From the NCBI RefSeq assembly GCF_001194135.2, contig NC_068981.1, positions 138,098,979-138,154,754 on the forward strand: a DNA stretch of 55,776 nucleotides, written 5' to 3'. Origin of the DNA: Octopus bimaculoides (lineage: Eukaryota). Position numbers and translations under genes: made by a program. Below, in pieces: positions 11,031-44,609 of this stretch (position 1 is the stretch's first letter; each line of letters begins with the position of its first letter). The notes under the pieces are model-generated. The model saw nothing but the letters and a program-made list of their open reading frames with translations, was not told the origin of the DNA and did no database searches.

Positions 11031-11204
11031 TTTCCTTTTTCAATAATGGCTGAAACAAGTGAAAGGTAAAAGGTAGTATTTATCTTCACTAAGAAGGTTA
11101 TACATGAATACTTGAAACAGAATACGCAAACCATACACGGAAGGATACTTCGTTGCAATTCAGAAACCTGAAGTTCATACCAAGCACATTCTACACCAAA
11201 CTTC

Positions 11205-11501
<297 letters not shown>

Positions 11502-11502
<1 letters not shown>

Positions 11503-11679
11503 TGGGCACTGCACACATCCTACGCAAAACACTTTCAATACAGTAAACATAAGAGCATCACAGCAAACCACAGCACATACCCAAGGCACACAGAGCTGCG
11601 CTCGGTAGTGAAGTGAAAGCACGTTATAAAAATAAAACTACTAAATAATAATAACACTAATAATAATAATAATAATAAT
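11502..11679 (+). mobile_element. 5'-truncated R4/Dong-like LINE 3' end embedded in (TAA)n
   Basis: Translates LGTAHILRKTLSIQ*, resembling the C-terminus of R4/Dong-clade ORFs; short 3' UTR, then (TAA)n; (TAA)n also lies upstream. Confidence 0.65.
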
Positions 11680-13017: not shown

Positions 13018-13470
13018 GATGGCTGTCCACTCGTGACCGAAGAAGACCATTGCTGACCTTCAGGAACATTGTGCGCTCTAGGACTAACTTATATTTTGCA
13101 TTTGCGGCTCCGTTGGTGGCTAATGAGCTCTGCTCTTCACAAGCATACACGACTACAAACATTGCATATTAAGCTTTCCCCATTCACTATATGAGCCGTG
13201 CGCTTTCGTGCAGCTCGCTTAAGTTCTTTATACTGGATACGTGCTCTCTCAAAAGTGTCGATGCCCTCCTTAACCTGCTTCCTCCATCCGTGGCGATGAC
13301 AGGCATTGTTCTCCCAGTCAGTGTCCAGCATATTACAGGCCTTTAATGAGGACTTGACACAGTCTTTAAAGCGCATCCTTGGTTTCTGTCGGAGTCTCCT
13401 TCCATTCACAAGTTCTCCATAGAGCATCTGCTTAGGAATCCTGCTATCCTTCATTCTAATAAGGTGTCCA
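13018..13470 (-). mobile_element. RTE/BovB-like LINE, 5'-truncated 3' end, flanked by (TACA)n on both sides
   Basis: ORF 13137-13520: GHLIRMKDSRIPKQMLYGEL...KPRMRFKDCVK...W...R..WR...CNVCSRVC, typical of the RTE ORF C-terminus. Confidence 0.85.
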
Positions 13471-14024
13471 ATACATACATACATACATACATACATACAT
13501 ACATACATACATACATACATACATCACTTACAAGAAAAAAATATATATACTATATTGGCTTACACGAAGCATTGAAATATTTCTTGGGGCGAGTCTGATG
13601 AAATTGAAACCGCAGTCGATTAACTTCGCAAACATGCTGTTGCAAAAAGCAATTGTTATTCCTATCCCTGTCGATTTTTAAAAGACACTTAATATCAACT
13701 AAAGGTTAGCATTAACGCAAAAAAAAAAGAGAAAAAAAAACAATAAATATGTACAGAATGCAGAGTTCATTGCAACACTCATTAACATCACTCAACACTC
13801 CTATATCTTTATATGGAACTGATCCGACAAAGTCGGATGTTGAAAACAAACAGCTTAAAAACAATTGAAAGATGTAGTTAGAAAACTAATCATTATAGAC
13901 GTCACTAGACAACAACGCATTATTCACGCTATCACTGGAGATTATACAAAAGTATGTGATATCACGTATTGGATAATCAATGTCTGCCTGTCTACATTAG
14001 CTGCCATTATGAGAGAACATCTAA

Positions 14025-15455: not shown

Positions 15456-15904
15456 AAAATTTCTCATCCTAGAAATATTGAATCATAATAAGCTCTCAGT
15501 ACAACTGGATGGATAGGTAAGTTCTACAATGAAGATTCAGTTGTTCAATCAACTGAACTACCTGCTTCTGAGTTAACGAGTGTAAGTGGCTGAGTATTCC
15601 ACAGGCACATGTACTCTTAATGTAATTTTCAAATAGAAGTATATGACAACGTTATACATTTGAACTACAAGTACAATCCATATTCGATACAGTTTCTGCT
15701 TACCCAATCCGATACGAGGCTATAAAAAAATGGTATTTACCCAAGGTGCCTAGGCTTGAACCCAGGGCCTCGTAACTGTACAACAACAACAACGACAACA
15801 ACTTATGAAGAAATCAACCTCACTAAAATACATAGACACGCCGAAGAAAAGATATATTTCTATTATAATATGCATTAGTTGAATATGATTAAAATAATCT
15901 CTGA

Positions 15905-17330
15905 AACTCCAGTAAAGTGTACACGTGCGGGAGGGACAAGTCGATGCTCTCCAATAGCGTCGTGGAACGTTGGACGGAAGGTCTGGTTAAGACGCTGGGG
16001 ATCTGGTTTGGTTCGGATCTCCAGAAAGAGAAGAATTGGAGTGAAGTCACAAGCAAGGTAACTGTCCTAATCCAGATTTGGTCTGGAAGGACGCTATCGC
16101 TGCTAGGGAGGGCGGAGGTGGCGCAGATGTACATAGTAACTGTTATCATCTACCGCCTGACCGTCGTGCCTTGCCCCGATTCGTGACTGAGCAAGCTGGA
16201 GCGTCTCCTCCTCCGCTTTTTGTAGAGAGCGGTACCACTTGTAAGGTGCTCTATCTGCTGTCATAAACCGTTAAAGGGTGGGCTAGGGATGTCGTTATAG
16301 GATGGGCTAGGGTGGTCACCGCTCGCGAAGTTTTTCTTACGGCAACTAACCTCCTTTCGGGACTTAGGCGCTTGGATTAAGTGGAGACCCAGACAGGGTG
16401 ATTGGCAGCTAGAGTGCTGACAGACACTCACGCTACTCTCCCGGGCGGGCAATACCGGCAGCTGGAGTTCCACCGCGGACTTCTATAGCGAGTTGGTAGA
16501 GGTCATGTCAGACGATGCTCTGGGGGAGACTCTGAACTTCGATAGAAATCAGTTAACCAACCTGTTCGAAAGAACTTTCGGGTCGGGGTATCTGGATAAT
16601 TATCAGAAATCCCTAACCTGGTTGGGATATCGATCTGCCTTACCTGTTCGAGAGAGGTTGTCAAGGCACGGTTGTGTCATCCCACCTTCCTGTTTGAGGT
16701 GCGAGCGGAACAGTGAAACTGTCCTGCACGCCTTCGTACAGTGTTACGGAAATTAGGGAATTGACAGCCTATATCGAACAGCTGTTATCAACGACAGAAA
16801 GAGGAGAGCTATCAGTTGAATTTATTATTAAGATTGTACTGGCCTCCTCACTAAACAGGGGAAAGAAGAGCTTGTTTCCTCTGCGTAGTGGCCATACTGA
16901 AAGAGACAGTATGGAGAACACGTGTGAAAGGGATCGCGACAGGTACCTTCATCTCCGGCCGGGGGCTGGTTGGTTACTTTTTACTACCACCTCCAAAGTA
17001 AAATCTGGTTGGAGAGGAGATACTTGTCGCATAGAAGGTTTGATAAAAGATGGACGACAATCGTAAGGAAGTTGTGAATGAATGGAAAAGGTTAAGTGCA
17101 GCCATCCAGCGATAGAAGGGTATACATGAGATAACGGTGGTGGGTTAATTAACCTGGCGATGTAAGTAATAGGAATTTTTAATTCTTTACCGATTTTTTG
17201 TGGAATTTAAAAAATATATTCATTCGATTTCATTATATTTGTTATTTTCTTTTTAATCCTTTCATTGTAATCACACTGTGTATGTCCATTTGTTCATCCT
17301 TGTAAAGTCCCCTCAATTTTGGGCCTTGTG
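15905..17330 (+). mobile_element. Tx1-like (L1 clade) non-LTR retrotransposon 3' half, frameshifted
   Basis: VKTLGIWFG...W....K......W..RTLSLLGRAEV...YRL...GGLGM and CLRCERNSETVLHAFVQC (zf-RVT-type motif), followed by a T-rich 3' UTR. Confidence 0.8.
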
Positions 17331-29541: not shown

Positions 29542-29831
29542 CTGATTGGCCAACATTTCTAGAAAACCACTATATTTGAACAACTAAAATGATTTCAGAA
29601 TTTCTAGTGGAATACTTTAATTAATTGGAGGTTTATCCCGTAAGTTTCATTAAATGTACGATAATAGCAATGTTTATAATATTCTTCTACCTCCACGCCT
29701 TTTCTATGCATCGTCCTAGTACTTCATCCTGCAAACGAATCGAATCTGCGGAACTATAAATATATATGCAAATCTATGTGAACCATATGACTGCACATCG
29801 TGTGTATGCATTTGATATTTCCTTATATAAG
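29542..29831 (+). promoter_or_regulatory. Putative Pol II promoter of the secreted repeat-protein gene
   Basis: CTGATTGGCC (reverse CCAAT/NF-Y consensus) at 29542-29551; TATAAATA at 29755-29762; TATATAAG at 29824-29831, about 50 bp before the ATG; the region lacks recognisable SINEs. Confidence 0.45.
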
Positions 29832-29877: not shown

Positions 29878-29935
29878 ATGAACTGCCAGTACATTATCGT
29901 CTGTTTTATAATAATTTGCTCATCAGTTATTGCAG
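29878..29935 (+). CDS. Exon 1 (signal peptide MNCQYIIVCFIIICSSVIA) of a secreted Ser/Thr/Tyr-repeat protein
   Basis: ATG with A at -3, 19-aa hydrophobic leader ending V-I-A, strong donor CAG|GTAAGA in phase 1, matching the phase-1 acceptor at 37604/37605. Confidence 0.7.
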
Positions 29936-30319
29936 GTAAGATTTCAAATATATCCCCAACCTTTTTAACCATTTTCTCAAAGAACGTTTCCGAGGGAGTT
30001 CACTTGGCAATTGTATTATGTATGTTGTTAACACATCGCTTCGTCGGTATAAGTATCCAAAAATTCTTTCCTTGTTCCACTGCGTTTCAAGCATAGCATG
30101 GTATCTTTGTTCGACAACACTGATTTAGTGGAAACGTACACAAGCCCCAACATATATATATATCCTCAAAAGTTGACAGACCGCCTGCTATAATTTTCGC
30201 CCTTGGCTATCAAATTTTTTGCTTAATAAATATATCTACCCGCCACACCTAGTTCTATATCAGATAATGTTTGCATTTCCTAAAACTCTTTTACATACTT
30301 CATAAGGTTAAAAAGAGTA

Positions 30320-30648
30320 AAGAACCTCTTTGGTCATGAATGACCATTGGATTGCACCTACAAAGTTCTCCTCCAAGGCACAAGTCCGGGCAAGATTGTT
30401 TATGGAAGACCAGCAGCTGGCCATGCATACCAGCCTCCCCTTTCCACACCACAGATGTTATCCAAGGAAAAGGCAAGGGTTGATACAGCTTGGCACCTGT
30501 GACGACGCAACTCATTTCTCCAGCTGAGTGAACTGGAGTAACGTGAAATAATGTGAGTAACGTGAAACACACAGCCTGATCCAGGAATTGAACTCACTAC
30601 TTCATGATTGTGATCCCGACGCTGTAACCACTGAACTATGTGCCTTCA
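30320..30648 (-). mobile_element. tRNA-derived SINE, family C (gagtggactggagcaacgtgaaatg body)
   Basis: Minus-strand head with A box tagttcagtggtta and B box gagttcaattcc; body recurs at about 32100, 34455-34630, 35095-35342 and 46470-46592. Confidence 0.75.
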
Positions 30649-30982
30649 CACATACTTTATAAATCTTACATTATACACACACGCACTCACATACATGCAT
30701 ACGTATGTACATATATGCACGCATACATACATACATACATACATACATAATTGAATGAATGAAAGAATGAATGAATGAATGATTGCCTCATCTTGTCAGA
30801 CGATAGTCATCTCACATTCAGCCTAATTGTACTTATCTGAAGAACACTGTCGAGGTAAACACTAAAATCTGCTAGAGCAAGATTTGACCAATACAGCAGA
30901 GGAACAAAACTAAATTCTATACATTTAAATAATTCAAACATGGGAATCACTTGTTACTTAATTCATACTTGTATTTAAAGTA

Positions 30983-31813
30983 CGAGGGGAAGAAAAAAAT
31001 TATCCTCACTTTCGCCATAACATATCTTTATTATTGTTATACTGCCTTCTGCGCATGCGTGCTTATATTTGGTACTATCGTGGTAACGTGATCGAAGCTT
31101 GAGCCTGATCGTACTATTTTTTTTTCTGGCTTTACAGTGTAAGTATGGCCGCTCCATTAATAATGTGCACCAAAAAAGAACAAAGAGCAGTGATCCGAGG
31201 GTTTTAGCACAATACGGGGACGCCCGTTAACCTCCACTACTGAGGAGAAGATTCAGCAAGCTCGAGAGAGGGTAATGGTGAAACGGAGAGTTATCATCGA
31301 TGAGAAAGCTCGTTCTCTGCTGATTAGTCATGGTTCTGCCTATCAAATCATCCACAATGAATTCGGCTTTCATAAAGTCTGTGCAAGATGGGTGCCAAGA
31401 GAGCTTTCTGCAGAGCACAAGCGCAAACGTCTTGTCGTCTGCCAACGTTTCCTCGATAGCTACAACAATGAGAGTGAGGAATTTTTGAGCAGAATGGTCA
31501 CAGGAGATGGAACGTAGGTCCATCATTATGAAGCGGAATTCAAAAGACAGAGTATGGAGTGGAAACATTCTGGCTCACCAGCGAAGAAGAAATTCAAGAC
31601 TCAGTCTTCTGTTGGAATACAGTCTTCTTTTTGGGGTTGCACGACCAACCGAAAGCCTTCTTCTTGGAGGGAATACGCAATCTTGTGAACCGCTGGACCA
31701 AGTGCATCGAAAAGGAAGGAGATTATATAGAAAAATGATGTATTTGTTTATTCCCTGCTTTTGTGTAAATACATTGAAAAACAAGAGTGTGTATAATCTT
31801 TTACTCTCCCTCG
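30983..31813 (+). mobile_element. Internally deleted mariner element
   Basis: TA at 30981-82 and 31814-15; ~28-bp imperfect TIRs (cgaggggaagaaaaaaattatcctcact / cgagggagagtaaaagattatacacact); transposase pieces KVCARWVPREL...MVTGD and GIRNLVNRWTKCIEKEGDYIEK*; most of the catalytic core is deleted. Confidence 0.9.
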
Positions 31814-31940
31814 TATATAGCTTTCAATGCCAAGTAACTTTTATTTTTTCTTTCCTACGAAATGTTCTGCCTAAAACGTTCGACTTCTGTTCTCCGCCGC
31901 AGCATGCAATTATATTCCGCTGCTTAAATGTTAATATTTT

Positions 31941-32975
31941 AAGGTGGTGACCTGGCAGAATCGTTAGCAGGCCGGGTAAAATAGTTAGCAATATTTCCTG
32001 TGTCTTCATGTTCTATGTTCTATGTTCAAATTCTGCCGAGGTCGACTTTGCCTTTCATCCTTCAGGGATCTATAAGATAAGTACTAGCTTGACACTGGGG
32101 TCTGTCGCAGGATTCCCCATCTTCGCCAGCTGAGTGGAGTGGAGCAACGTGAAATGAAATCGTTGTTATTATGCAAAAGTGTCGTAAGTCCAAAACGTTG
32201 CTTTTGCATAAAACGAAAAAGTAGTTTCACTTTTCCATAGTAAAACCGTTGTGCTACGCTTTGACAATTTTTGATATTTTGGCATCTGAAGCAGCTGCAT
32301 ATACGATAGTTTGACCAAATGAACTGACTATTACAAAAAAATAAATATTGAGGACGACGCATTTTGCCAAATTTGGACATACGACAGTTTAACATAATAG
32401 AAACGAAGTGTTTTGCTCAAGAACACAACGCGCCTAACACCTCTCCAGAAATTCCTGGCCTTGTCCAAATTTGAAACCAATATAAATATTTGAAGAGCGC
32501 TGTGTAAAATTGTTAGCGGCATTTCGTATACTTTTATGCTCTGAGTTCAAATTCCGCCAAGTTCGACTTTACCTTTTAATTTTTTCGGGGTCTTTACCTT
32601 TACCTTTTAATTTTCTCGGGGTTTTTAAAATTTTTTCAGAGTCAAATTCTGTATAAACACCAGTTGAGCACTGGGGTTGATGTTATCGACTTACCTCTTC
32701 TCTCGAAATTGCTGGCCTTGTGTCAAAATTTGGAACAAATATTAATATTTGAAGATAAGGCGGCAAACTGGCAGACTCGGTAGCCCATCGGACAAAATGC
32801 TTAGCGGCATTTCTTACAGATTTATGCTCCGAGTTCAAATTCCACCGAACTCGACTTTGCCTTTCAACCTTTCGGGGTTGATAAAATAAGTATCTCTTTA
32901 GCACTGGGCCGGTGTAATCGACGAAGCCCCTCCTATTCAAAACTGCTGGCCTTGTGCTAAAATTTTAAACAATAT
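31941..32975 (+). mobile_element. Cluster of SINE B copies and SINE C fragments
   Basis: B heads or cores at about 31941, 32500 and 32757; C fragment at about 32100-32160. Confidence 0.75.
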
Positions 32976-33082
32976 CACTATTTGAAGATGTAGAAAATAA
33001 CTCGCTTTGTTGGATTCTAAACTTTTTACTCGATAAAGAATTTTTTTCAGTTGTACTATCACGTGGCAGGCTTCGTGTAGAG

Positions 33083-33279
33083 TAGCTTTCCTAAACCGGG
33101 GTTCCCCGGAACCCTAGAATTCCATAAAAGATTCCTAGGGATTCCACGAGAAAGAGTGAGATAAGCTAATGCTAATTTCACGATCGTAATATTAATATAC
33201 ATGCACAACATATTGGATATTGTAATCCAAACAATACCCTATCTAACCTGTTATGTTATCAAAAAAAAAAAATAACAAC

Positions 33280-33310
<31 letters not shown>

Positions 33311-34075
33311 NNNNNNNNNNNNNNNNNNNNNNNNNNNNNNNNNNNNNNNNNNNNNNNNNNNNNNNNNNNNNNNNNNNNNNNNNNNNNNNNNNNNNNNNNN
33401 NNNNNNNNNNNNNNNNNNNNNNNNNNNNNNNNNNNNNNNNNNNNNNNNNNNNNNNNNNNNNNNNNNNNNNNNNNNNNNNNNNNNNNNNNNNNNNNNNNNN
33501 NNNNNNNNNNNNNNNNNNNNNNNNNNNNNNNNNNNNNNNNNNNNNNNNNNNNNNNNNNNNNNNNNNNNNNNNNNNNNNNNNNNNNNNNNNNNNNNNNNNN
33601 NNNNNNNNNNNNNNNNNNNNNNNNNNNNNNNNNNNNNNNNNNNNNNNNNNNNNNNNNNNNNNNNNNNNNNNNNNNNNNNNNNNNNNNNNNNNNNNNNNNN
33701 NNNNNNNNNNNNNNNNNNNNNNNNNNNNNNNNNNNNNATATATATATATATATATAATCAATCCAAACATGAACAAGCAAGAAAAAACAACAACAACGCG
33801 AGGATGGGGAATAAGTACAGTGTTACTGGACGCCCAGGAAAGGAAGGAAAGAAAAGAAAGAGGATCTCACGTTTCGAGCGGAGCTCTTCATCAGAAATAT
33901 ATAAAAAGTCCAAGGAAGGGAAGGCGGAGAAAAAAAATCGCCAACGATACACACGCGGTCACGATATTTAACACGTGAACTACGATGGAGAAATATGTTT
34001 TTTTGTGCAGGGGTTCCTTGAGGATCGTAATTTATTTTAAGGGTTACGCAAGAGTAAAATGGTTGAGAAACACTG
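33083..34075. mobile_element. Non-autonomous hAT (Charlie-like) element spanning a gap
   Basis: Identical 8-bp TSD GTGTAGAG at 33075-33082 and 34076-34083; right TIR reads cagtgtttctcaacc (reverse complement), left TIR tagctttcctaaacc (10/15 match). Confidence 0.75.
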
Positions 34076-34454
34076 GTGTAGAGACTTCTCAACCGTAAAC
34101 TCTTGGGTTCGCTTTTTACTGTGAAGCCTCTTGTGCTGTCGTTTCTATAAACACGGTTTGGCTATACGTGATGAGTAGGTACTTCAGGCGAATGAATAAC
34201 TAAATCCACATTGTCGAACGTCGAAGATCCACTACCGCTACCACATTATGTTTCTATAAGGATTGGAGTGGCAGAAACGGAAAGTAATGGATTAGATAAC
34301 TTGCTGTATTTATTTACGTTCTTTTTACGATATGAGTTCAAAATCCCGCAGAGGCCTGATTTAAAACATCGCATTTAAAAAGAAGGCAAAGAAACAAACT
34401 AGCTACAGAAATTTTCGTATCTACTGTTGTGAATTCACCCACCAGCCTTGTGAG

Positions 34455-35972
34455 AGTCATATAGACTCATAAGGGCCAGTTTCCAATACGTATATAATAT
34501 ACCCCACCTGGACGGGACGCAAGTCCGTCACAGGGTTACTCATTTTTGCCAGCTGAGTGGACCGGAGCAATGTGAAATGAAATCTTTTGCTCAAGAACAC
34601 GACGCATCGCCTGGTTCAGGAATCGAAAGAAAGAATTATTGTGATTAATATATCGAAGGGGACGAGCTGGCAGAATCGTTAGCGCGTAGGTTAAAATGTT
34701 TAGCGGCATTTCTTCCGGCTCTTTACGTCTAGAGTTCAAATTCCGCCGAGGTCGACTNNNNNNNNNNNNNNNNNNNNNNNNNNNNNNNNNNNNNNNNNNN
34801 NNNNNNNNNNNNNNNNNNNNNNNNNNNNNNNNNNNNNNNNNNNNNNNNNNNNNNNNNNNNNNNNNNNNNNNNNNNNNNNNNNNNNNNNNNNNNNNNNNNN
34901 NNNNNNNNNNNNNNNNNNNNNNNNNNNNNNNNNNNNNNNNNNNNNNNNNNNNNNNNNNNNNNNNNNNNNNNNNNNNNNNNNNAGTACCAGTGAAGCATTC
35001 GGTCCAATATAAACAAACTTTGCTCCCGCTCCCCTCAAAATTGTAGACCCTGTGACAAAATTAGAAAGAATTTAAAAACATATAATAAAAGTTCTCTCCC
35101 GAGTCATATAGATTCACGGGGCCGGTTTCCATGGCGTATATAAATTCCCCGCCTGGACGGGACGACGCTCCGTAGTAGGATTACTCTTTTATACTATCTT
35201 ACACCATCTGAGTGGACTGGAGCAACGTGAAATGAAGTGTTTTGCTCAAGAATACAACGCGTCTCTCGGTCCAGGAATCGAAACCACAATCTTATAATCA
35301 TGAGTCTTACACTCCTACCCACTAAGCCAAACGCCTCAACACTGTGATCGTATAAGCCACTGAAACAATTCTCAGCTTTTTCTTTCGCTATAGTTTGCAA
35401 GTAAATCCTTGTTAAATTGTAATATCTGATTGTTAATATCTTTAAATATCTGATTGTTATCAGTCGCCCAAGGTACCACGCTGTAGGACTGAACCCGAAA
35501 GCAAAAATGGTTAAGAAACAAACTACTTACCACACAGCCACGCCTACGACTATACTGACGTTATTTACGAATATAAATGAATAAGAAAAATAACTATGCT
35601 ATAGGCGCAGGAGTGGCTCTGTGGTAAGTAGGTTGCTTACCAACCACAAGGTTCTGGTTTCAGTCCCACTGCGTGGCATCTTGGGCAAGTGACTTCTACT
35701 ATAGCTTCGGGCCGACCAAAGCCTTGTGAGTGGATTTGGTAGATGGAAACTGAAAGAAGCTTGTATATATATGAATATGTATATATATATATGTATGTAT
35801 GTGTGTGTGTGTGTGTGTATTTGTCTCCCTAGCATTGCTTGACAACCGATGTTGGTATGTTTATATCCCCGTAACTTAGCGATAGAATAAGTCCCGGGGT
35901 CGTTCTGCTCGACTAAATGTGGTGCTCCAGCATGGCCAATAGTCAAATGACTGAAACAAGTAAAAGAGTAAA
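34455..35972. mobile_element. SINE cluster: C (-, 34455-34630), B (+, 34658-35070, gapped), C (-, 35095-35342), A head (-, 35461-35548), A (+, 35604-35972)
   Basis: Matches to the window consensuses. Confidence 0.8.
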
Positions 35973-37604
35973 CTGTAGGATTTCTGTAGCATTTCTTCTC
36001 CGATGTATTCCTTTGTTAATTAATACGGCTTGTTAATAAAGGCTACGTACCATTTTGAACGTCTATGCATTGTCTTTAATGGCAGAAACATTCATTTGCT
36101 AGCAATTGTAAATGATTTTTTTTCTCATATTCCTGTTTGCTGTAGTATATTCGAATATGGAAGTTCCTTTATTATTGTTTTCTTTTTCTATTTGGCACGG
36201 CACATTGTATTTACTGAGAGAATTCGCCTTTATATCAAAGAAACTTAAAACGTATCTTCTCTCAAGGAACAATTCCACTAGCAACTTTTGAACAACGAAA
36301 GGCTATAATGCGATTTTAAGGAAGTTAATACTAAAATCAAGAAACTTTCCGAATCTGATTTGGAAAACGTGTTGCCAAAACAACTTGCACTCCGTATGAT
36401 CACTCGTCTCAAATGTCAGTCACTTGCAAAAGTCGATCTTTGATTGGTTTAAGTCAACCGACTTGATTTACAACGCTCTGACTACCTTGCTCAGTAAATT
36501 TATACTCAATATAAAGGGTGAATTCCTAGTACTACGGATCTATTTAACGGATACTTGTCCAATTCTGCATCATAATGACAATACAAGTTCTGTTTCAATT
36601 TCGGACCGTCTCTAAGAGACACCATAGATTGGATCCATAGCAGCGGTCCAATTCACTTCTAAGTAGAAGATGAATCAATGCAAAACGGATCCTACAACAC
36701 AGATGTTATAGCACCTGAACAAATTCGCCGTAAATCAGCAGGGTGAGACCTGCATCAGAGACCTTTGGAGAATGTTATGTGAGAATATTTTCATGGAAGA
36801 AAGAATGTTACGTAAATTGTCCTTTGTTTTGTCTACTATTTTGCAAGTTGTATTTTCTTCTTTTCTTTATCATTTTTCGTTTTCCCATTACTATATATGC
36901 CAGAAATCTGCATAAAGGAAGACAGTTGCCTCGGTGAAAGGGTTGTTAAATGCTTCAGCGTTCTCATTTAGAAAAGATTATCGTAGAGAAAGAAAGCTGC
37001 TTAAGTCTACGATTGCAACAGGAATTCAAAAAACTTTGAAGGAAAATCGATTGAAAATATCTACCTATTATACCCTGAAAGTAGTTTATTGAATTATTAG
37101 TAGTAGTTTTGGTTGTAGCCTGAAACTAATTTCTCCAACACTACTTTGTTTGTGATTGTAGCCTGAAACTAATTTCTCCAACACAACTTTGCTTGTGATG
37201 TCATCTTCACACAGCTTCGACTGGTAACACAATGTTATGCTAATTAATGTATTCTAATGTTCAAGTTAACTGTAAATGTACGTAAGCTCACATATATAAA
37301 AGATTGTGCAATTCACATAAGGAATTAATACGTTATGAGCATGAACATTTTCAATAATAGTACTTACTGTACACAGAAAGTGCACTATGAGAAAATTTCT
37401 TAGAGATATTTATGAGGTTTAAGCAATTTTATTATTATTTCATAAACACTCATGAATGGAAAACCAGTTACTTTAAAAAACAGCATATAATTTGGAATGA
37501 AAATTATATTGTAAAATCTTATGTGTCATAGGGATTCTTTTGAAAATATTGTAACTGCATGAAAAAAAAATTAATAATATTTCAAACTTTTCAATTATTC
37601 ATAG

Positions 37605-40051
37605 CACCAGTTCAGAAAAAGAACCACAACAGAGATAATTTTGGGAAATCCATACAACATAGACATCATGGATCGAGTGACGATCATCATTACAAAAAGG
37701 AAAAACCAGCAGCATCACCAACAGAATCAGTAACAAACAACACAAAAATAAGTAATACAAGGAAAACATCAACAGAATCTACCTTAGAGAAATTACCAGG
37801 AACATCAAGACACCTGAAACCAGGATCTGTCAGATCTACAAACACATTACCAGAGCTTACAACACGGGTACCGTCATCAACAATATCAAGACGATCGTCA
37901 ACGTATGGAACATCAGCATACGGTTCATCAACAGGAATATTAGTACCAGTAGATACGACGGTGTACGACACACCAACTATACCAACACAGAAGCCAACGT
38001 ATGGCATATCAGAAGAGATATCAACACACAACATATCTATATACGATCCGGCAACGTATAACTCATCTACAGACAACTCGTCAACATATGACCCAGCGAC
38101 ATATACATCACCAACAGACTCAGCAATATATGACATCTCACCGTATGACATATCAGCATACGACACGCAAACACACAACACTTCAAAGTACAATATTTCA
38201 TCGATATACAACGCAGCAGCAATAAACACATCATACGACATAGACTCATCGACTTACGGCACACCTGAATATGAAATATCAAGATATGAAACTTCAACGT
38301 ATGATATATCAACTTACGAATCATCAATATACGACATCACCCCGTACAAAACGTCGACTGACTCTTTACTGTATGACATACTGACACATACAACGACGTA
38401 CGAAGCACCAACATATGACATTGCAACATACGAAACATCAATATACAACCTATCAACGTACAACATAACGTACAACGTATCAACATACAATACATCAACA
38501 ACATATGATGAGTCAACATATGACCACNNNNNNNNNNNNNNNNNNNNNNNNNNNNNNNNNNNNNNNNNNNNNNNNNNNNNNNNNNNNNNNNNNNNNNNNN
38601 NNNNNNNNNNNNNNNNNNNNNNNNNNNNNNNNNNNNNNNNNNNNNNNNNNNNNNNNNNNNNNNNNNNNNNNNNNNNNNNNNNNNNNNNNNNNNNNNNNNN
38701 NNNNNNNNNNNNNNNNNNNNNNNNNNNNNNNNNNNNNNNNNNNNNNNNNNNNNNNNNNNNNNNNNNNNNNNNNNNNNNNNNNNNNNNNNNNNNNNNNNNN
38801 NNNNNNNNNNNNNNNNNNNNNNNNNNNNNNNNNNNNNNNNNNNNNNNNNNNNNNNNNNNNNNNNNNNNNNNNNNNNNNNNNNNNNNNNNAACGAAAGATC
38901 TATTTTATTACGTAGTGTCAGAATATGGCACCTCAACAGAGACATCAACATACGATCCATTGATAGAATCGTCAACATACAACACCTCAACAACATACAA
39001 CATAACAACAAACACGTCAACATACGATTACTCAACATACGCAACATCAACTTACGGCACATCAGCATACGATACACTCCCTTACGATACATCAACACAC
39101 CATGTAGCAACCTATGGCACACCAGCGTACAACATATTCGCCGACGATGTATCACCGTATTACACATCAGCAGAGACATCAACATACGAAACGTTGCCAC
39201 AATCATCTACATACAACTCGTCAACGTACAACACATCAACAGGATACGACATAACAAACACATCTGCCTATGATGCAACAACATATGGTTTCTCAACAAC
39301 ATACGGTATATCAAATTACGACGAACAATCTTACAAATCGACATCGTACGATATATTTGAATACGATAGTTTGGACTACGATGCATCAATATATGATACA
39401 TCAACAGAGACTTCAACATATGACACGTTAACAGAAATTTCAACATACAATACGTCAAGATACAATATATCAACGACATACAACATAGCAACAAACTCAT
39501 CAATATATGACACATCAACATACGGTACATCTACATATTCAACATATAACGCATCAACTTACTACCCACCAATGTATGATTCATCGAAATACGATGCTTC
39601 AACTTACGACACGCCAACTTACGACTTGTTCGGGTACGACGAATCAACATACGGCACATCTCTATATGATACATCAACATACGACATATTAAGTAAAACA
39701 ACAACAAACGACACATCAAAGTATAATACATCAACGGCCATATATGACACATCGCAATACAATGCCTCAACATACGATACACCGAATTATATATCAACAG
39801 GAACAACGACAAAACCAGCATGGTCTACAACAGCACAAATAGGATCGACTACACAATATTACCCAAAACATCATAGACATCATAAGCAGCCCCAGAAGCA
39901 TCACAAAACTATTTGGCCAAATGGTATTGACTATGTAGATGTTAAAGCTTTCATTGTCGGACACGGTCCCACTAATAAGAACAACATAAAGAAGTCGAAG
40001 TCTAATCTATTTAAAAAACGATTGAAAACGCCTCTAAGTTCTACACATTAA
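37605..40051 (+). CDS. Main exon of a secreted, Cys-free, Thr/Ser/Tyr/Asp pentapeptide-repeat (mucin-like) protein; 362-N gap inside
   Basis: Stop-free frame on both sides of the gap (38528-38889); acceptor ttttcaattattcatag|CA at 37604/37605 in phase 1; TAA at 40049-40051, ATTAAA at 40053-40058. The ORF-track Met at 37559 lies in the polypyrimidine tract and is probably intronic. Confidence 0.8.
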
Positions 40052-41310
40052 AATTAAACAAACACTCAATGAATAAGTGCGTGCTTTGTCTACATACTGA
40101 TTTAACGTTGGTTTAACTAGTGGTTTTATTTATAGGTATCATGATTTTCATAGTAATAGTTCACTTGTTAAACTACAGTTTCAACTTCCGAGAAAGCTAA
40201 AAACAAAATTAACAAACTATAACATTACAGAAGAAATCCCCAAGACAAAACTTTTTTTAAAATGGACAAATGGTTCGACGTCCCGTTCAATAGGCGAGTC
40301 TTGCATTCTCAGTTTTTAAGTCACAGACACGAGTGTAAGAGACACGATACTGGATTTCCGGTGTCTAAACTCAGAGTTTGATCTGATGCTCTGCCAGTCT
40401 ACTGTTTGATGCAGAATATGGACGAATACACCAACCCCTATACTTCACTGATACTTTGTACCAGTATTGATTTCTAGCATTAACCGTAGATTTTTGGCAA
40501 GGAGTTTAGTCAATTAAACTGATTCCAGTACGAGACTATTATCTTATTCCATCGCTGCTGAAAGGGCGGCAGGCTCAGATGTCCTCGCAGGGGTTTGAAC
40601 TTAGAACCTAGAGAGATGTAACTAAATATCGCAATGTATTTCGTCTGCCACTCATCCGATTCTACCAATTCACCAACACTGCCCATCCAAACAGCAACAA
40701 CAATAATTATATTAACATTGATAATCATAATCTTGAATTATATTGAATATATTAAATGAAGAATAAATATTTTGGTCGGTTTATGGTTTAACTTTGTCTA
40801 CACAGCAATAAATGATAAAGAAGTCGAATTGTTTTGTTATATATTTCACCTTACCTGTTATTGTTTATTCCAAATTCAATCTTGATTCTGCAAACCTATG
40901 ATCAAAATCTTTCCGTCCGTGACCAGCTAACTCAACAACCCCTTAGAACACAATTTGTAAAGGATCACCAACTATCAATGTAGAATTATTTACAGGACAC
41001 AGAGAAACCAATATATAGTTTGCAGTTTTGGCGCTGCTATACACGTAGAACAGCAATAAAATATGAGAAATTGTAACGTTCTAGCATTCCTGGGTGTTAT
41101 TTGGATCTTCATATTTTCCCTCTTGTTTCAATAAAATAAGATCCAGCAGCTCATTGAAAGTAGTTCAGTAATTTATATCCCTGGGAGCATTGGACTTGTG
41201 TTTAGCAAAAGAAAACCAATAATATATCTATTTATACTCAATACGTTCTGGCAGACTCGCATGTTAATATGTGATCGCTGGTGTTTTTCGTTATCGGAAA
41301 ACATCTGTCA

Positions 41311-43780: not shown

Positions 43781-44066
43781 CTTTAAACGATGTGTTCATA
43801 AATGTTATTCATTGATGTGAAGGACTTTGAAATACATTGGGTTTCGACTTTGTTATTTGTCCAGCCAGTCAAAGAGACCCCAAACAAAAGAATCTAAGAA
43901 GGGTACAGATTGTCTTGTTTATAAAAAAACAAATCAGAGAGTAAATTATTTTCTGATTCATACTGATGTCTACCAAACTTCATGAGATGCACGCAGATCG
44001 ATGAGAATCCAAACATTAGCGTATCTATTCCTTCTCAAAACGTTCTAGAAGATTCTCGAACAGAAT
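43781..44066. repeat. Local duplication, copy 2 (paralogous to 41311-41565)
   Basis: See copy 1. Confidence 0.85.
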
Positions 44067-44609
44067 ACTTTGAGAATTTTGCTTTAGGAACAACACCACT
44101 AAAACCAACACTATGGCTACGATATGTTGATGACACCTTTATACTCTGGCCTCACCAGGAAGATACCCAAGTGCTGTTAGATCATGTGAACTCAATGAAG
44201 CCATCCATGCAGTTCACAATGGAAAAAGGAAAATACGAAAACTACAAGAAGCACATGTGATAGGACACAACAACCTCCTAAGCAGACTGAGTGCAGATAT
44301 GAGCAGCATATGGGAACCGGTATTAAGGAAGGATAAAAAAATATTAGATTTATAAGCCCTAAGATTCACTCCATAATTGTTCACCGGCATATGGTGTAGA
44401 GGTATAGAGCGCGGGCTACTGATTCCGAGTTCGATTCCAAGCAGTGACTAGAACAACAATGATAATAACATCGAAAAATACCTTAGGACTGAGAACCCGG
44501 GTTCAAAATTTCCCCAAGACACCTGAAGAAGGCTGGAGGGTATATCAGCCGAAACGTTGTATTAACAACAAACAAGATGAGGACAAATATCCGTTGAATG
44601 TAAATAATG
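44062..44609 (+). mobile_element. Penelope-like element, 5'-truncated and internally deleted
   Basis: EYFENFALGTTPLKPTLWLRYVDDTFILWPH...NSMKPSMQFTMEK (PLE RT, YVDD) joins IRKLQEAHVIG...LSR...IWEPVL* (GIY-YIG C-terminal-like), then the terminal repeat. Confidence 0.85.
44518..44563 (+). ncRNA. Minimal type I hammerhead ribozyme motif
   Basis: GACAC-CTGAAGA-A-GGCTG(GAGGGTATAT)CAGCC-GAAAC-GTT-GTATT: conserved core, perfect 5-bp stem II, palindromic AACGTT stem III, stem I with one mismatch. Confidence 0.6.

What the first reader, a model, noticed from the sequence alone, without database searches (positions are those of the whole stretch)
29878..40051. Hidden spliced gene for a secreted triblock protein: His/Lys-rich ends around an acidic Tyr-pentapeptide core
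Seen: a 19-aa signal-peptide exon (phase-1 donor at 29935/6) joins the phase-1 acceptor at 37604/5. The product reads MNCQYIIVCFIIICSSVIA|APVQKKNHNRDNFGKSIQHRHHGSSDDHHYKKEK..., then several hundred residues of Y-[D/N/E/G]-x-S-T repeats (e.g. YDTSTYGTSTY, YDISTYESSIY), then ...YYPKHHRHHKQPQKHHKTIW...KKSKSNLFKKRLKTPLSSTH*. It is about 834 aa if the gap size is right. The sequenced mature part has no Cys, no TM segment and no globular domain I recognise. Established: gel-forming mucins rely on Cys-rich vWD/CTCK domains and are not Tyr-periodic; reflectins, suckerins and beak His-rich proteins use different motifs. Inference: a lineage-specific extracellular material protein (egg capsule or stalk, spermatophore, adhesive mucus, cuticle). 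Basic ends with an acidic core could self-coacervate. Regular Tyr could act as aromatic stickers or as DOPA/dityrosine/sulfation sites, with His available for metal or quinone cross-links.
Basis: partly seen in the sequence, partly recalled or inferred. Interest (0 to 1): 0.85.

Follow-up and report, generated by a model that had tools for sequence, protein, structure and literature searches.

The report
Secreted tyrosine-periodic mucin-like orphan gene
This is very probably a real two-exon gene for a secreted, cysteine-free, apparently unfolded repeat protein with an acidic Tyr/Ser/Thr core and basic His/Lys ends; it looks like a new sequence family within the familiar class of fast-evolving, mucin-like secreted material proteins of molluscs, and its function is untested.

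Summary
Exon 1 (29878-29935) encodes MNCQYIIVCFIIICSSVIA and ends in a strong phase-1 donor. It is the only convincing signal-peptide exon among 159 candidates in the 27.6 kb upstream. The acceptor at 37604/5 is the first AG after a 72-nt AG-free zone and fits the phase. Exon 2 is open on both sides of the gap (307 and 386 codons), and other frames and strands carry 7-43 stops. Selection for the protein is clear. All 87 Tyr codons end in C/T, although 82% of four-fold sites end in A/G. dN/dS between three internal ~78-aa super-repeats is 0.21-0.55. Continuity across the gap cannot be tested; the "834 aa" length depends on the nominal gap size. Neither the splice nor expression could be verified without RNA data. 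No homologue, Pfam domain, solved structure or predicted fold was found. However, the databases seem to lack this genome (probably an octopus), so "lineage-specific" is untested. By composition this is an orphan, Pro-poor mucin-like protein (core S+T 36-40%, 23 core N-x-S/T sequons). Its unusual features are periodic Tyr-Asp and a matching HRHH-x5-HH motif at each end. Material, adhesive or coacervate roles remain inference. Interest is moderate.

The parts
29824..29831 (+). TATA-like box TATATAAG, 47 nt before the ATG; implies a 5'UTR of roughly 20 nt (inferred)
   Evidence: Read directly. No ATG lies between it and 29878. An in-frame TAA sits 12 nt upstream of the ATG.
29878..29935 (+). Exon 1 coding part: MNCQYIIVCFIIICSSVIA plus the first base of the Ala codon. 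It is a signal peptide with V at -3 and A at -1, followed by a phase-1 donor GCAG|GTAAGA.
   Evidence: In one search it is the only one of 159 ATG-to-phase-1-GT candidates in 10000-37604 with hydrophobicity >=2 and donor score >=2, and it ranks first on both measures. A at -3 gives a good start context.
29936..37604 (+). Intron of 7,669 nt (nominal), filled with transposon debris. It contains two assembly gaps (33311-33737 and 34758-34982).
   Evidence: Mariner remnant at 31275-31738 (Mos1 transposase E=7e-4). SINE copies. Gap flanks are microsatellite or SINE. AG-free zone 37531-37603 before the acceptor.
37559..37561 (+). Alternative in-ORF ATG (MKKKLIIFQTFQLFIA...), the start codon of the rival single-exon model
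   Evidence: There is an in-frame TGA at 37541. The 19-residue hydropathy is 0.68, against 2.08 for exon 1. T at -3, F at -3 of the putative cleavage site and P at +1 make it the weaker model.
37605..37891 (+). Exon 2, basic N-terminal block (96 aa, pI 10.4, 7 His, 10 Lys, 7 Arg). It contains HRHHGSSDDHH and ends in an RR dibasic pair.
37892..38527 (+). Exon 2, acidic repeat core before the gap (212 aa; T 19.8%, S 16%, Y 14.6%, D 8.5%; pI 4.05)
38528..38889 (.). Assembly gap inside the repeat core (362 N; nominally 121 codons when the next base is included)
   Evidence: The two sides are in frame only at the nominal size. Continuity is not testable.
38890..39787 (+). Exon 2, acidic repeat core after the gap (299 aa; T 23.4%, Y 17.1%, S 16.4%, D 9%). 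It includes three ~78-aa super-repeats at 38909-39142, 39143-39376 and 39377-39625.
   Evidence: offset 234 nt, 63.5% nt identity over 392 nt; dN/dS 0.21-0.55, dS 0.7-1.07
39788..40051 (+). Exon 2, basic C-terminal block (87 aa, pI 10.4, 8 His, 13 Lys). It contains HRHHKQPQKHH, a short hydrophobic patch IWPNGIDYVDVKAFIVGHG, a KKR site, and the stop TAA at 40049-40051.
   Evidence: The only pLDDT values above 50 fall in this patch.
40047..40058 (+). Two ATTAAA hexamers overlapping or following the stop, with a GT-rich stretch at 40078-40092. This is a possible poly(A) signal giving a very short 3'UTR (inferred).
   Evidence: Read directly. The nearest AATAAA is about 710 nt downstream (~40763).

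Best explanation
This is a functional two-exon gene, probably in an octopus genome. A TATA-box promoter drives a tiny exon that encodes only the signal peptide. After a transposon-filled 7.7-kb phase-1 intron, one large exon encodes the whole mature protein.

The product is secreted, Cys-free and apparently intrinsically disordered. It is best described as an orphan, Pro-poor mucin-like (S/T-rich tandem-repeat) glycoprotein with a Tyr every fifth residue.

Inferred mechanism:
- The 630-residue-scale acidic core (Y-[D/N/G/E]-x-S-T, built from ~78-aa super-repeats) acts as an extended, hydrated, glycosylated polyanionic spacer. About 18 Y-N-x-S units would carry N-glycans, and the Ser/Thr could carry O-glycans.
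- The two basic ends, each carrying an HRHH-x5-HH cluster and many Lys, act as sticky handles. They could bind the acidic cores of neighbouring molecules, other polyanions, or metal ions.
- The molecules would then associate end-to-core into a gel, coat or cement in response to pH or ions.
- The periodic Tyr provides weak aromatic contacts and possible sites for sulfation or oxidative cross-linking to the Lys/His ends.

Shown: the gene structure at the DNA level, coding constraint, composition, periodicity and block charge pattern. Inferred: the splice, secretion, glycosylation, disorder, assembly mode and tissue.
For: Coding and selection:
- The frame is open for 307 + 386 codons, while other frames carry 7-43 stops.
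- All 87 Tyr codons are TAC/TAT, although 82% of four-fold sites are purines (P ~ 2e-65).
- In a neutral-decay simulation the frame never stayed open (0 of 2000 runs).
- The repeats are only 61-67% identical in DNA, yet all offsets are multiples of 3.
- dN/dS is 0.21-0.55 at dS 0.7-1.07.

Gene model:
- Exon 1 is uniquely good among 159 candidates.
- The acceptor is the first AG after a 72-nt AG-free zone and is phase-compatible; an in-frame TGA lies at 37541.
- TATA box, short UTRs and ATTAAA at the stop.
- The spliced cleavage site VIA|AP obeys the -3/-1 rule.

Class:
- Core S+T is 36-40%. Half of the post-gap 100-aa windows reach >=40% S+T.
- 23 of 28 core Asn lie in sequons, against 10.3 +/- 2.5 in shuffles.
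- No Cys and no Pfam domain.
- No PDB relative.
- AF2 gives pLDDT 37.5 with no secondary structure.

Block polyampholyte: pI 10.4 / 4.05 / 10.4. Both ends share HRHH-x5-HH.

Precedents in the literature:
- Orphan mucins arise repeatedly by gain of exonic T/S repeats (PMC9417175).
- Drosophila has domain-less mucins and Pro-poor mucin-related proteins (PMC2515642).
- Molluscan secretomes are rich in lineage-restricted repetitive low-complexity proteins (PMC5400390).
- His-rich termini flank the core of mussel preCols, and His drives pH-dependent coacervation of squid beak proteins (PMC9999432).
- Octopus eggs are coated and cemented by oviducal-gland mucoproteins (PMC8976471).
Against: - There is no RNA, proteomic or orthologue evidence of any kind, so neither the splice nor expression is demonstrated.
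- The gap may hide a frameshift, a stop, an intron, or a join between two paralogues.
- Pro is low in the core (3-5%), and acidic residues adjoin many Ser/Thr. From general knowledge, both reduce GalNAc-transferase efficiency, so dense O-glycosylation is uncertain.
- The AF2 result comes from a single sequence and would be poor for any orphan, so it is weak evidence for disorder.
- Heavy glycosylation would interfere with Tyr-Tyr contacts and with Tyr modification, so the proposed roles partly compete with each other.
- Tissue and function are unconstrained by the data.
Confidence: 0.55

Rival explanations
1. Same protein, different material logic. It is a poorly glycosylated, quinone-tanned or dityrosine-cross-linked structural precursor (egg chorion or stalk, sucker or gut cuticle, beak-associated matrix). 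The 15-17% Tyr in the core would be converted to DOPA or oxidised and cross-linked to the Lys/His of the termini, as in trematode eggshell vitelline proteins and squid beak.
For: Core Tyr is 14.6-17.1% and the mature protein has no Cys. This matches the description of trematode vitelline proteins (Cys-free, 12-15% Tyr, DOPA-Lys/His cross-links; PMC11727788). His and Lys are concentrated in both ends. His-catechol cross-linking hardens squid beak (PMC11727788, PMC9999432).
Against: Known DOPA proteins are basic, with Lys or Gly next to Tyr. Here Tyr sits in an acidic, S/T-rich context (Y followed by D/E 41 times; YK only 3 times). The 36-40% S+T and 23 core sequons point to glycosylation. There is no match to the trematode eggshell family or any other family.
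Confidence: 0.2
2. Single-exon gene. Translation starts at the in-ORF ATG 37559 (MKKKLIIFQTFQLFIAPVQKK...), and the exon at 29878 belongs to nothing or to another transcript.
For: The ORF does contain an ATG 46 nt upstream of the proposed acceptor, followed by KKK and a 12-residue partly hydrophobic stretch. No RNA evidence links the two exons, which lie 7.7 kb apart.
Against: Hydropathy is 0.68, against 2.08 for exon 1. There are two Gln in the h-region, F at -3, P at +1, and T at -3 of the ATG. The stretch reads as a typical 3' splice region (A/T-rich, AG-free for 72 nt, then the first AG). Exon 1 is the single outstanding signal-peptide exon in 27.6 kb, has a TATA box, and its phase matches.
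Confidence: 0.12
3. An acidic matrix protein for a mineralised or chitinous hard part (statolith, stylet, radula). The regularly spaced Asp/Tyr would bind Ca2+ or chitin.
For: The core is acidic (pI 4.05, net -53). It is secreted, repetitive and an orphan, like many molluscan shell-matrix proteins (PMC5400390).
Against: D+E is only about 12-13% of the core, far below classical Asp-rich matrix proteins (general knowledge). There is no chitin-binding or other domain. Nothing ties the gene to such tissues.
Confidence: 0.05
4. Not a functional gene: a decaying minisatellite that happens to be open, or a pseudogene or assembly chimera joined across the gap.
For: The DNA is low-complexity and A/C-rich. 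The search returned spurious-looking look-alike ORFs such as YDVSTYDVST.... There is a gap in the middle of the ORF. No homologues or expression data exist.
Against: Tyr codons never carry a purine at the third position (P ~ 2e-65). dN/dS is 0.21-0.55 between repeats with dS near 1. The non-repetitive 96-aa and 87-aa ends are open in the same frame. The ORF starts exactly at a splice acceptor and ends at ATTAAA.
Confidence: 0.05
5. The pentapeptide array folds into a regular beta-solenoid like bacterial pentapeptide-repeat proteins, with Tyr (position i) and Ser (i-2) packing inside.
For: The period is 5, with a small residue two positions before an aromatic one. This superficially matches the steric pattern of A(D/N)LXX repeats (general knowledge).
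Against: There is no Pfam Pentapeptide hit even at E<=1 and no A[DN][LF]xx units. Only 54% of Tyr intervals are exactly 5. AF2 shows no strands and pLDDT 37.5.
Confidence: 0.03

Closest known systems
Orphan / non-gel-forming mucins and 'mucin-related' proteins (e.g. mammalian MUC7/Muc10; Drosophila Muc/Mur proteins including Sgs glue proteins)
   Same: Signal peptide followed by a long, poorly conserved tandem repeat rich in Ser/Thr that fills most of the protein. The repeat array is encoded in one large exon. There are no conserved domains and no homologues. The array evolved by repeat expansion (PMC9417175, PMC2515642). The core has 36-40% S+T and many sequons.
   Different: Pro is low (3-5%). 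Tyr occurs every fifth residue (15-17%), mostly followed by Asp/Asn. The flanks are basic and His/Lys-rich. Glycosylation is untested.
Molluscan lineage-restricted secreted RLCD (repetitive low-complexity domain) proteins, e.g. shematrins, KRMPs
   Same: Secreted, made of repeats only, without detectable homologues, and rapidly evolving by expansion and contraction (PMC5400390).
   Different: Those were described from bivalve and gastropod mantle, and are mostly Gly/Tyr- or Lys-rich and basic. This one is acidic and S/T/Y-rich, comes from a probable cephalopod, and has no known tissue.
Squid beak His-rich proteins (DgHBPs)
   Same: A cephalopod secreted protein with tandem pentapeptides containing one Tyr each, and His available for pH-dependent association and cross-linking (PMC9999432).
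   Different: The HBP units are GHGXY and GAGFA: Gly/Ala/His-rich, uncharged apart from His, and hydrophobic. Here the counts of those motifs are 0. The repeats are acidic and hydrophilic, and His is confined to the two ends.
Mussel byssal preCols (block architecture only)
   Same: A central extended core flanked at both termini by His-rich domains that mediate metal-dependent end-to-end cross-linking (PMC9999432). Here HRHH-x5-HH occurs at both ends.
   Different: The preCol core is collagen with silk- or elastin-like flanks. There is no sequence relationship. Here the ends are also Lys-rich and the core is acidic.
Trematode eggshell vitelline proteins (vpB; TES domain IPR012615)
   Same: Secreted, Cys-free, 12-15% Tyr, with Lys/His as cross-link partners (PMC11727788).
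   Different: Those are ~29-kDa proteins with a conserved TES domain. No such match was found here. The present protein is much larger, S/T-rich, acidic in the core and strictly periodic.

Membership tests
Mucins / mucin-related proteins (functional class) | N-terminal signal peptide (secreted or membrane-bound) | tested here: met
   Heuristic only. The exon-1 peptide has 10-residue hydropathy 3.37 and 19-residue hydropathy 2.08, with V at -3 and A at -1. SignalP was not available.
Mucins / mucin-related proteins (functional class) | Tandem repeats rich in Ser/Thr occupying at least one third of the protein (PMC2515642) | tested here: met
   The core is 511 of 694 sequenced mature residues. 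S+T is 35.8% in core A and 39.8% in core B. There are more than 80 units.
Mucins / mucin-related proteins (functional class) | Pro content of the repeat domain about 5% or more (a true 'PTS' domain) | tested here: inconclusive
   Pro is 5.2% in core A and 3.0% in core B. Only 23 of 287 post-gap windows reach S+T>=40% together with P>=5%. This corresponds to the 'mucin-related' (Pro-poor) category of PMC2515642.
Mucins / mucin-related proteins (functional class) | Dense O-glycosylation of the repeat domain | not testable with these tools
   Needs native protein (PAS or lectin staining, glycoproteomics) or at least NetOGlyc-type prediction.
Gel-forming mucins | Cys-rich vWD, C8/TIL and C-terminal cystine-knot domains | tested here: not met
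   No Cys in the 694 sequenced mature residues and no Pfam hit.
Pentapeptide-repeat proteins (Pfam PF00805) | A(D/N)(L/F)XX units forming a right-handed quadrilateral beta-helix | tested here: not met
   No Pfam hit at E<=1. No matching units. AF2 shows no strands.
Squid beak His-rich proteins | C-terminal tandem GHGXY / GAGFA pentapeptides | tested here: not met
   0 occurrences. Motif definition from PMC9999432.
Suckerins | Alternating Ala/His-rich and Gly/Tyr-rich (GGY/GGL) modules | tested here: not met
   0 GG[YLF] motifs, and Gly is about 3%. The module definition is from general knowledge.
Reflectins | Repeated [M/F]D(x5)MD(x5)MD reflectin motifs; Met-rich | tested here: not met
   0 motifs, and a single Met in the sequenced mature protein. 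The motif is from general knowledge.
Trematode eggshell vitelline proteins | Trematode eggshell synthesis (TES) domain | tested here: not met
   No Pfam family matched any part of the protein.
Molluscan secreted RLCD proteins (descriptive class, PMC5400390) | Signal peptide plus a repetitive low-complexity domain, with no similarity to known proteins | tested here: met
   The assignment of the genome to a mollusc rests on my recollection of octopus SINE sequences.

The most novel reading that the evidence does not exclude
The protein is the main polymer of a so-far uncharacterised octopus extracellular material, such as the egg-string cement or a skin or sucker adhesive. It would work as a self-complementary triblock polyampholyte. 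A (sulfo-/glyco-)Tyr-periodic polyanionic core and two HRHH-x5-HH/Lys-rich cationic ends would drive pH-, Ca2+- or metal-triggered self-coacervation, followed by Tyr-His/Lys curing. That would be a new design principle among biological material proteins.
Probability: 0.12. Interest if true: 0.7.

Novelty: new variant of a known kind. Interest (0 to 1): 0.4.

Why it matters
If the gene is expressed, it adds a new sequence family to the small catalogue of cephalopod extracellular material proteins (reflectins, suckerins, beak proteins). Its block design (basic His/Lys handles, acidic Tyr-periodic glyco-core) is simple enough to test recombinantly for pH- or metal-triggered assembly. It would also be a clean example of how orphan mucin-like genes are built: a signal-peptide exon, a phase-1 intron, and one exon expanded from pentapeptides into ~78-aa super-repeats under purifying selection. 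On present evidence it is a well-supported gene prediction with an unknown role, not a discovery of function.

Tried and rejected
Homology:
- phmmer/word search of the pre-gap protein against 5.8 billion proteins gave nothing.
- Full HMMER scan of the post-gap 386 aa against 1.84 billion representatives gave 13 hits at E 5e-7 to 5e-4. All fall inside the repeat region, and the 12 whose sequences I read are low-complexity look-alikes (YDTSE, YDVST, FDTST, YNAAG arrays). None touches the C-terminal tail.
- Pfam on the whole protein and on each end separately gave nothing.
- PDB sequence search gave nothing meaningful.
- A search for paralogues in the window by tblastn found only the gene itself.

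Structure:
- AF2 single-sequence prediction gave pLDDT 37.5 and no secondary structure. No fold search was run because the model is meaningless. The beta-solenoid idea was rejected.

Organism:
- A LINE-tail ORF found only two unnamed ENA proteins at 46-50% identity.
- An exact-sequence look-up of a window ORF found nothing.
- Rfam and tRNA scans were empty.
- The only lead is that two SINE sequences I remember from octopus genomes hit 5 and 13 times. This is memory-based, and the second pattern was chosen after I had read a copy in the window.

Literature:
- Five peptide strings from the protein occur in no indexed paper.
- Keyword searches found no octopus protein of this kind.

Other:
- The in-frame agreement across the gap was considered and rejected as evidence, because the gap size is nominal.
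- Fam20C-type S-x-E phosphorylation sites are too few to matter (4 sites).
- Tyr sulfation remains only a possibility. 64 of 82 core Tyr have an acidic residue within +/-5, but it is at +1 in 41 cases and at -1 in only 5, whereas -1 is the stronger determinant (general knowledge).

Full report
**1. What the sequence shows**

- ATG 29878 opens 19 codons, MNCQYIIVCFIIICSSVIA. G29935 is the first base of a split codon, and the next bases are GTAAGA.
- At 37604/5 the sequence ...ttcaattattcatAG|CACCAGTT supplies CA. The junction therefore reads ...VIA-A-PVQKKNHNRDNFGK....
- The frame stays open to the gap (37607-38527, 307 codons) and from 38891 to the TAA at 40049-40051 (386 codons).
- A TATATAAG box lies at 29824-29831. 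There is no intervening ATG, and an in-frame TAA sits 12 nt before the start.
- Two ATTAAA hexamers overlap and follow the stop, followed by a GT-rich stretch.

**2. The assembly gaps**

The pre-gap coding part ends on a codon boundary. One base plus 362 N equals 121 codons, so the two sides agree in frame only at the nominal gap length. That is a 1-in-3 coincidence and I give it no weight.

What does not depend on the gap length is the repeat register. Every alignment between pre- and post-gap repeats places them in the same codon register. Strand, unit, amino-acid logo and codon usage are also the same.

The upstream part has a start but no end, and the downstream part has an end but no start. 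One exon interrupted by a repeat-induced assembly gap is the economical reading. A hidden stop, a frameshift, a small intron or a join of two paralogues cannot be excluded. The figure of '834 aa' is only nominal.

The two other gaps lie in the intron. One sits between (GT)n and (AT)n. The other sits inside a tRNA-like SINE copy. Neither flank looks coding.

**3. Is it coding, or just an open minisatellite?**

The DNA is A/C-rich with a 15-nt period, so this needed testing.
- The coding frame has 0 stops. The other + frames have 10-20 and the minus frames 7-43.
- Shuffles of the post-gap part give a longest open frame of 77 codons on average (maximum 183), against 386 observed.
- At four-fold degenerate sites 82% of third positions are purines (A 67%). 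All 87 Tyr codons nevertheless end in C or T, where a purine would make a stop (P about 2e-65).
- A neutral-decay simulation of the consensus unit never kept the frame open (0 of 2000 runs).
- The post-gap core contains three ~78-aa super-repeats (offset 234 nt, 61-67% nucleotide identity, all offsets multiples of 3). Between them pS exceeds pN, with dN/dS of 0.21, 0.46 and 0.55 at dS 0.7-1.07.

The array is therefore old and has been kept as protein.

**4. The splice**

In the 27.6 kb upstream of the acceptor there are 159 ATG-initiated open stretches that end in a phase-1 GT. It ranks first on both measures.

The acceptor is the first AG after an AG-free zone from 37531 to 37603, with an in-frame TGA at 37541. 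It is phase-1 compatible and creates a textbook cleavage site (V at -3, A at -1, then AP). A second AG 6 nt downstream (37610/11) is also phase-compatible, so NAGNAG alternatives are possible.

The rival start, ATG 37559 (MKKKLIIFQTFQLFIA), is much weaker:
- Its hydropathy is 0.68, against 2.08 for exon 1.
- Its Kozak context is poor.
- It has F at -3 and P at +1 of the putative cleavage site.
- It lies in sequence that reads as a polypyrimidine/A-T tract.

I rate the two-exon model at about 0.8 against 0.12 for the single-exon model. Only RNA data can settle it.

The intron is long because it is full of repeats. It holds a mariner remnant (Mos1 transposase E=7e-4) and several SINE copies.

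**5. The protein**

| Block | Length | pI | Net charge | Other features |
|---|---|---|---|---|
| N-terminal | 96 aa | 10.4 | +9 | 7 His |
| Core (sequenced) | 511 aa | 4.05 | -53 | T 20-23%, S 16%, Y 15-17%, D 8.5-9%, K+R about 2% |
| C-terminal | 87 aa | 10.4 | +13 | 8 His |

- In the core, 43 of 80 Tyr-Tyr intervals are exactly five residues (P = 2.5e-26). Most of the rest are 9-10 residues, that is, two units with one Tyr lost.
- Around each Tyr the pattern is S(-2) T(-1) Y D/N/G/E(+1) T/I(+2).
- Twenty-three of the 28 core Asn lie in N-x-S/T sequons, against 10.3 +/- 2.5 in shuffles. This follows from the unit: Asn at position 2 is always followed two residues later by Ser. D/N exchange therefore switches a unit between acidic and potentially N-glycosylated.
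- There is no Cys and no TM-like segment.
- The two ends share an HRHH-x5-HH arrangement: HRHHGSSDDHH and HRHHKQPQKHH (weak, E=0.027 for the pair).
- The block boundaries carry dibasic sites: RR before the core and KKR near the C-terminus.

**6. Relatives and fold**

No relative was found.
- The pre-gap protein returned nothing.
- The post-gap protein returned 13 hits, all confined to the repeat region; the 12 I read are low-complexity look-alikes, and none covers the C-terminal tail.
- Pfam and PDB gave nothing.
- Single-sequence AF2 gave pLDDT 37.5 with no secondary structure. This agrees with disorder, but it is weak evidence for an orphan.

The negative homology result must be read with care. 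The same collections did not contain this window's own ORFs. They held only two distant matches to a LINE fragment that should be abundant in this genome. The source species and its relatives therefore seem to be missing, and 'lineage-specific' remains untested.

Two SINE sequences that I remember from octopus genomes hit the window 5 and 13 times, against 0 expected. The cephalopod guess is therefore reasonable, but it rests on memory.

**7. What it most likely is**

By composition and architecture the best-fitting known kind is the orphan mucin-like or 'mucin-related' protein:
- a signal peptide;
- one large exon of poorly conserved S/T-rich tandem repeats filling most of the protein;
- no other domain.

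Mucins are a functional class, not a homology class, and orphan members arise repeatedly by gain of exonic T/S repeats (PMC9417175). Drosophila has several domain-less mucins and a Pro-poor 'mucin-related' group (PMC2515642). In molluscs, lineage-restricted secreted proteins made only of repetitive low-complexity domains are common (PMC5400390).

Those criteria are indeed not met, since there is no Cys.

Three features are unusual within the class: Tyr at every fifth residue, the acidic character of the core, and the symmetric basic His/Lys ends.

**8. How it probably works (inference)**

- The core would be an extended, hydrated polyanion carrying N-glycans, and probably O-glycans.
- The cationic ends would bind the acidic cores of neighbours or other polyanions. 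Through HRHH-x5-HH they could also bind metal ions. This gives end-to-core association that responds to pH and ions on secretion into sea water.
- There are precedents for each element. His-rich termini flank the core in mussel preCols, and His drives pH-dependent coacervation of squid beak proteins built from Tyr-containing pentapeptides (PMC9999432).
- The periodic Tyr may add aromatic contacts or be modified. Oxidative cross-linking to Lys/His occurs in trematode eggshell proteins, which are also Cys-free with 12-15% Tyr (PMC11727788). I keep that as the main functional rival.
- Sulfation is possible but not favoured by the position of the acidic residue, which is at +1 rather than -1.
- A candidate setting is the mucoprotein coat and cement that the octopus oviducal gland puts on eggs (PMC8976471). 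Nothing here ties the gene to any tissue.

**9. Verdict**

- Secretion and the triblock design are supported.
- The splice is very likely but unproven.
- The function is open.
- Lineage specificity is untested.

This is a new sequence variant within a known kind (orphan secreted mucin-like/RLCD proteins), not a new kind of system. Interest is moderate. It is a good candidate for a quick RNA-seq check and, if expressed in a secretory gland, for biomaterials work.

Noticed in passing
window 31275-31738 (+), inside the intron: Remnant of a mariner-type DNA transposon. ORF fragments match Mos1 transposase (E=7e-4) and end in the typical ...KCIEKEGDYIEK tail. The frame is broken into several pieces.
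   Followed up: partly
window 1769, 10933, 11794, 14326, 14559, 19333, 28500, 32022, 32543, 32831, 34732, 46723, 49877 (25-mers); also 3904, 19821, 25805, 35722, 50893: Two families of short interspersed repeats (a tRNA-like head ...GAGTTCAAATTCCGCCGAGGTCGAC, and ...CCTTGTGAGTGGATTTGGTAGACGG) occur 13 and 5 times in 56 kb. They are often followed by (CA)n/(TA)n microsatellites at which the assembly gaps sit. I recall both as abundant octopus SINEs, which would place the window in an octopod genome (memory, not tested).
   Followed up: partly
window 15900-17100 (+), 13137-13520 (-), 43982-44260 (+): Degraded non-LTR retrotransposon pieces. There is a GC-rich (50%) stretch with LINE-like C-terminal ORF fragments, a LINE-tail ORF with two 46-50% identical ENA proteins, and an RT fragment with YVDD. 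None gave a Pfam hit at E<=0.01.
   Followed up: partly
window 37610/37611: A second AG 6 nt downstream of the proposed acceptor (CACCAG|TT) is also phase-1 compatible. A NAGNAG-type alternative would remove Ala-Pro and give ...VIA-VQKK.
   Followed up: no
window 37661-37693 and 39872-39904 (+): Both basic ends carry the same His arrangement, HRHH-x5-HH (HRHHGSSDDHH and HRHHKQPQKHH, E=0.027). This may be a paired metal-binding motif. Dibasic sites (RR at the N-block/core boundary, KKR near the C-terminus) could allow proteolytic trimming of the ends.
   Followed up: partly
protein P0004, not in the window: One database protein (644 aa) starts with about 170 residues of a similar pentapeptide array (M-T-Y-[D/N]-T) fused to a large globular domain. 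I did not test whether this is a real Tyr-periodic N-terminal extension or a mis-called ORF through a minisatellite.
   Followed up: no
window 11153-11622: Long (ATT/ATC)n-type trinucleotide repeat that yields poly-Ile, poly-Tyr and poly-Leu ORFs on both strands around a 10-N gap. It is simple sequence, not coding.
   Followed up: no
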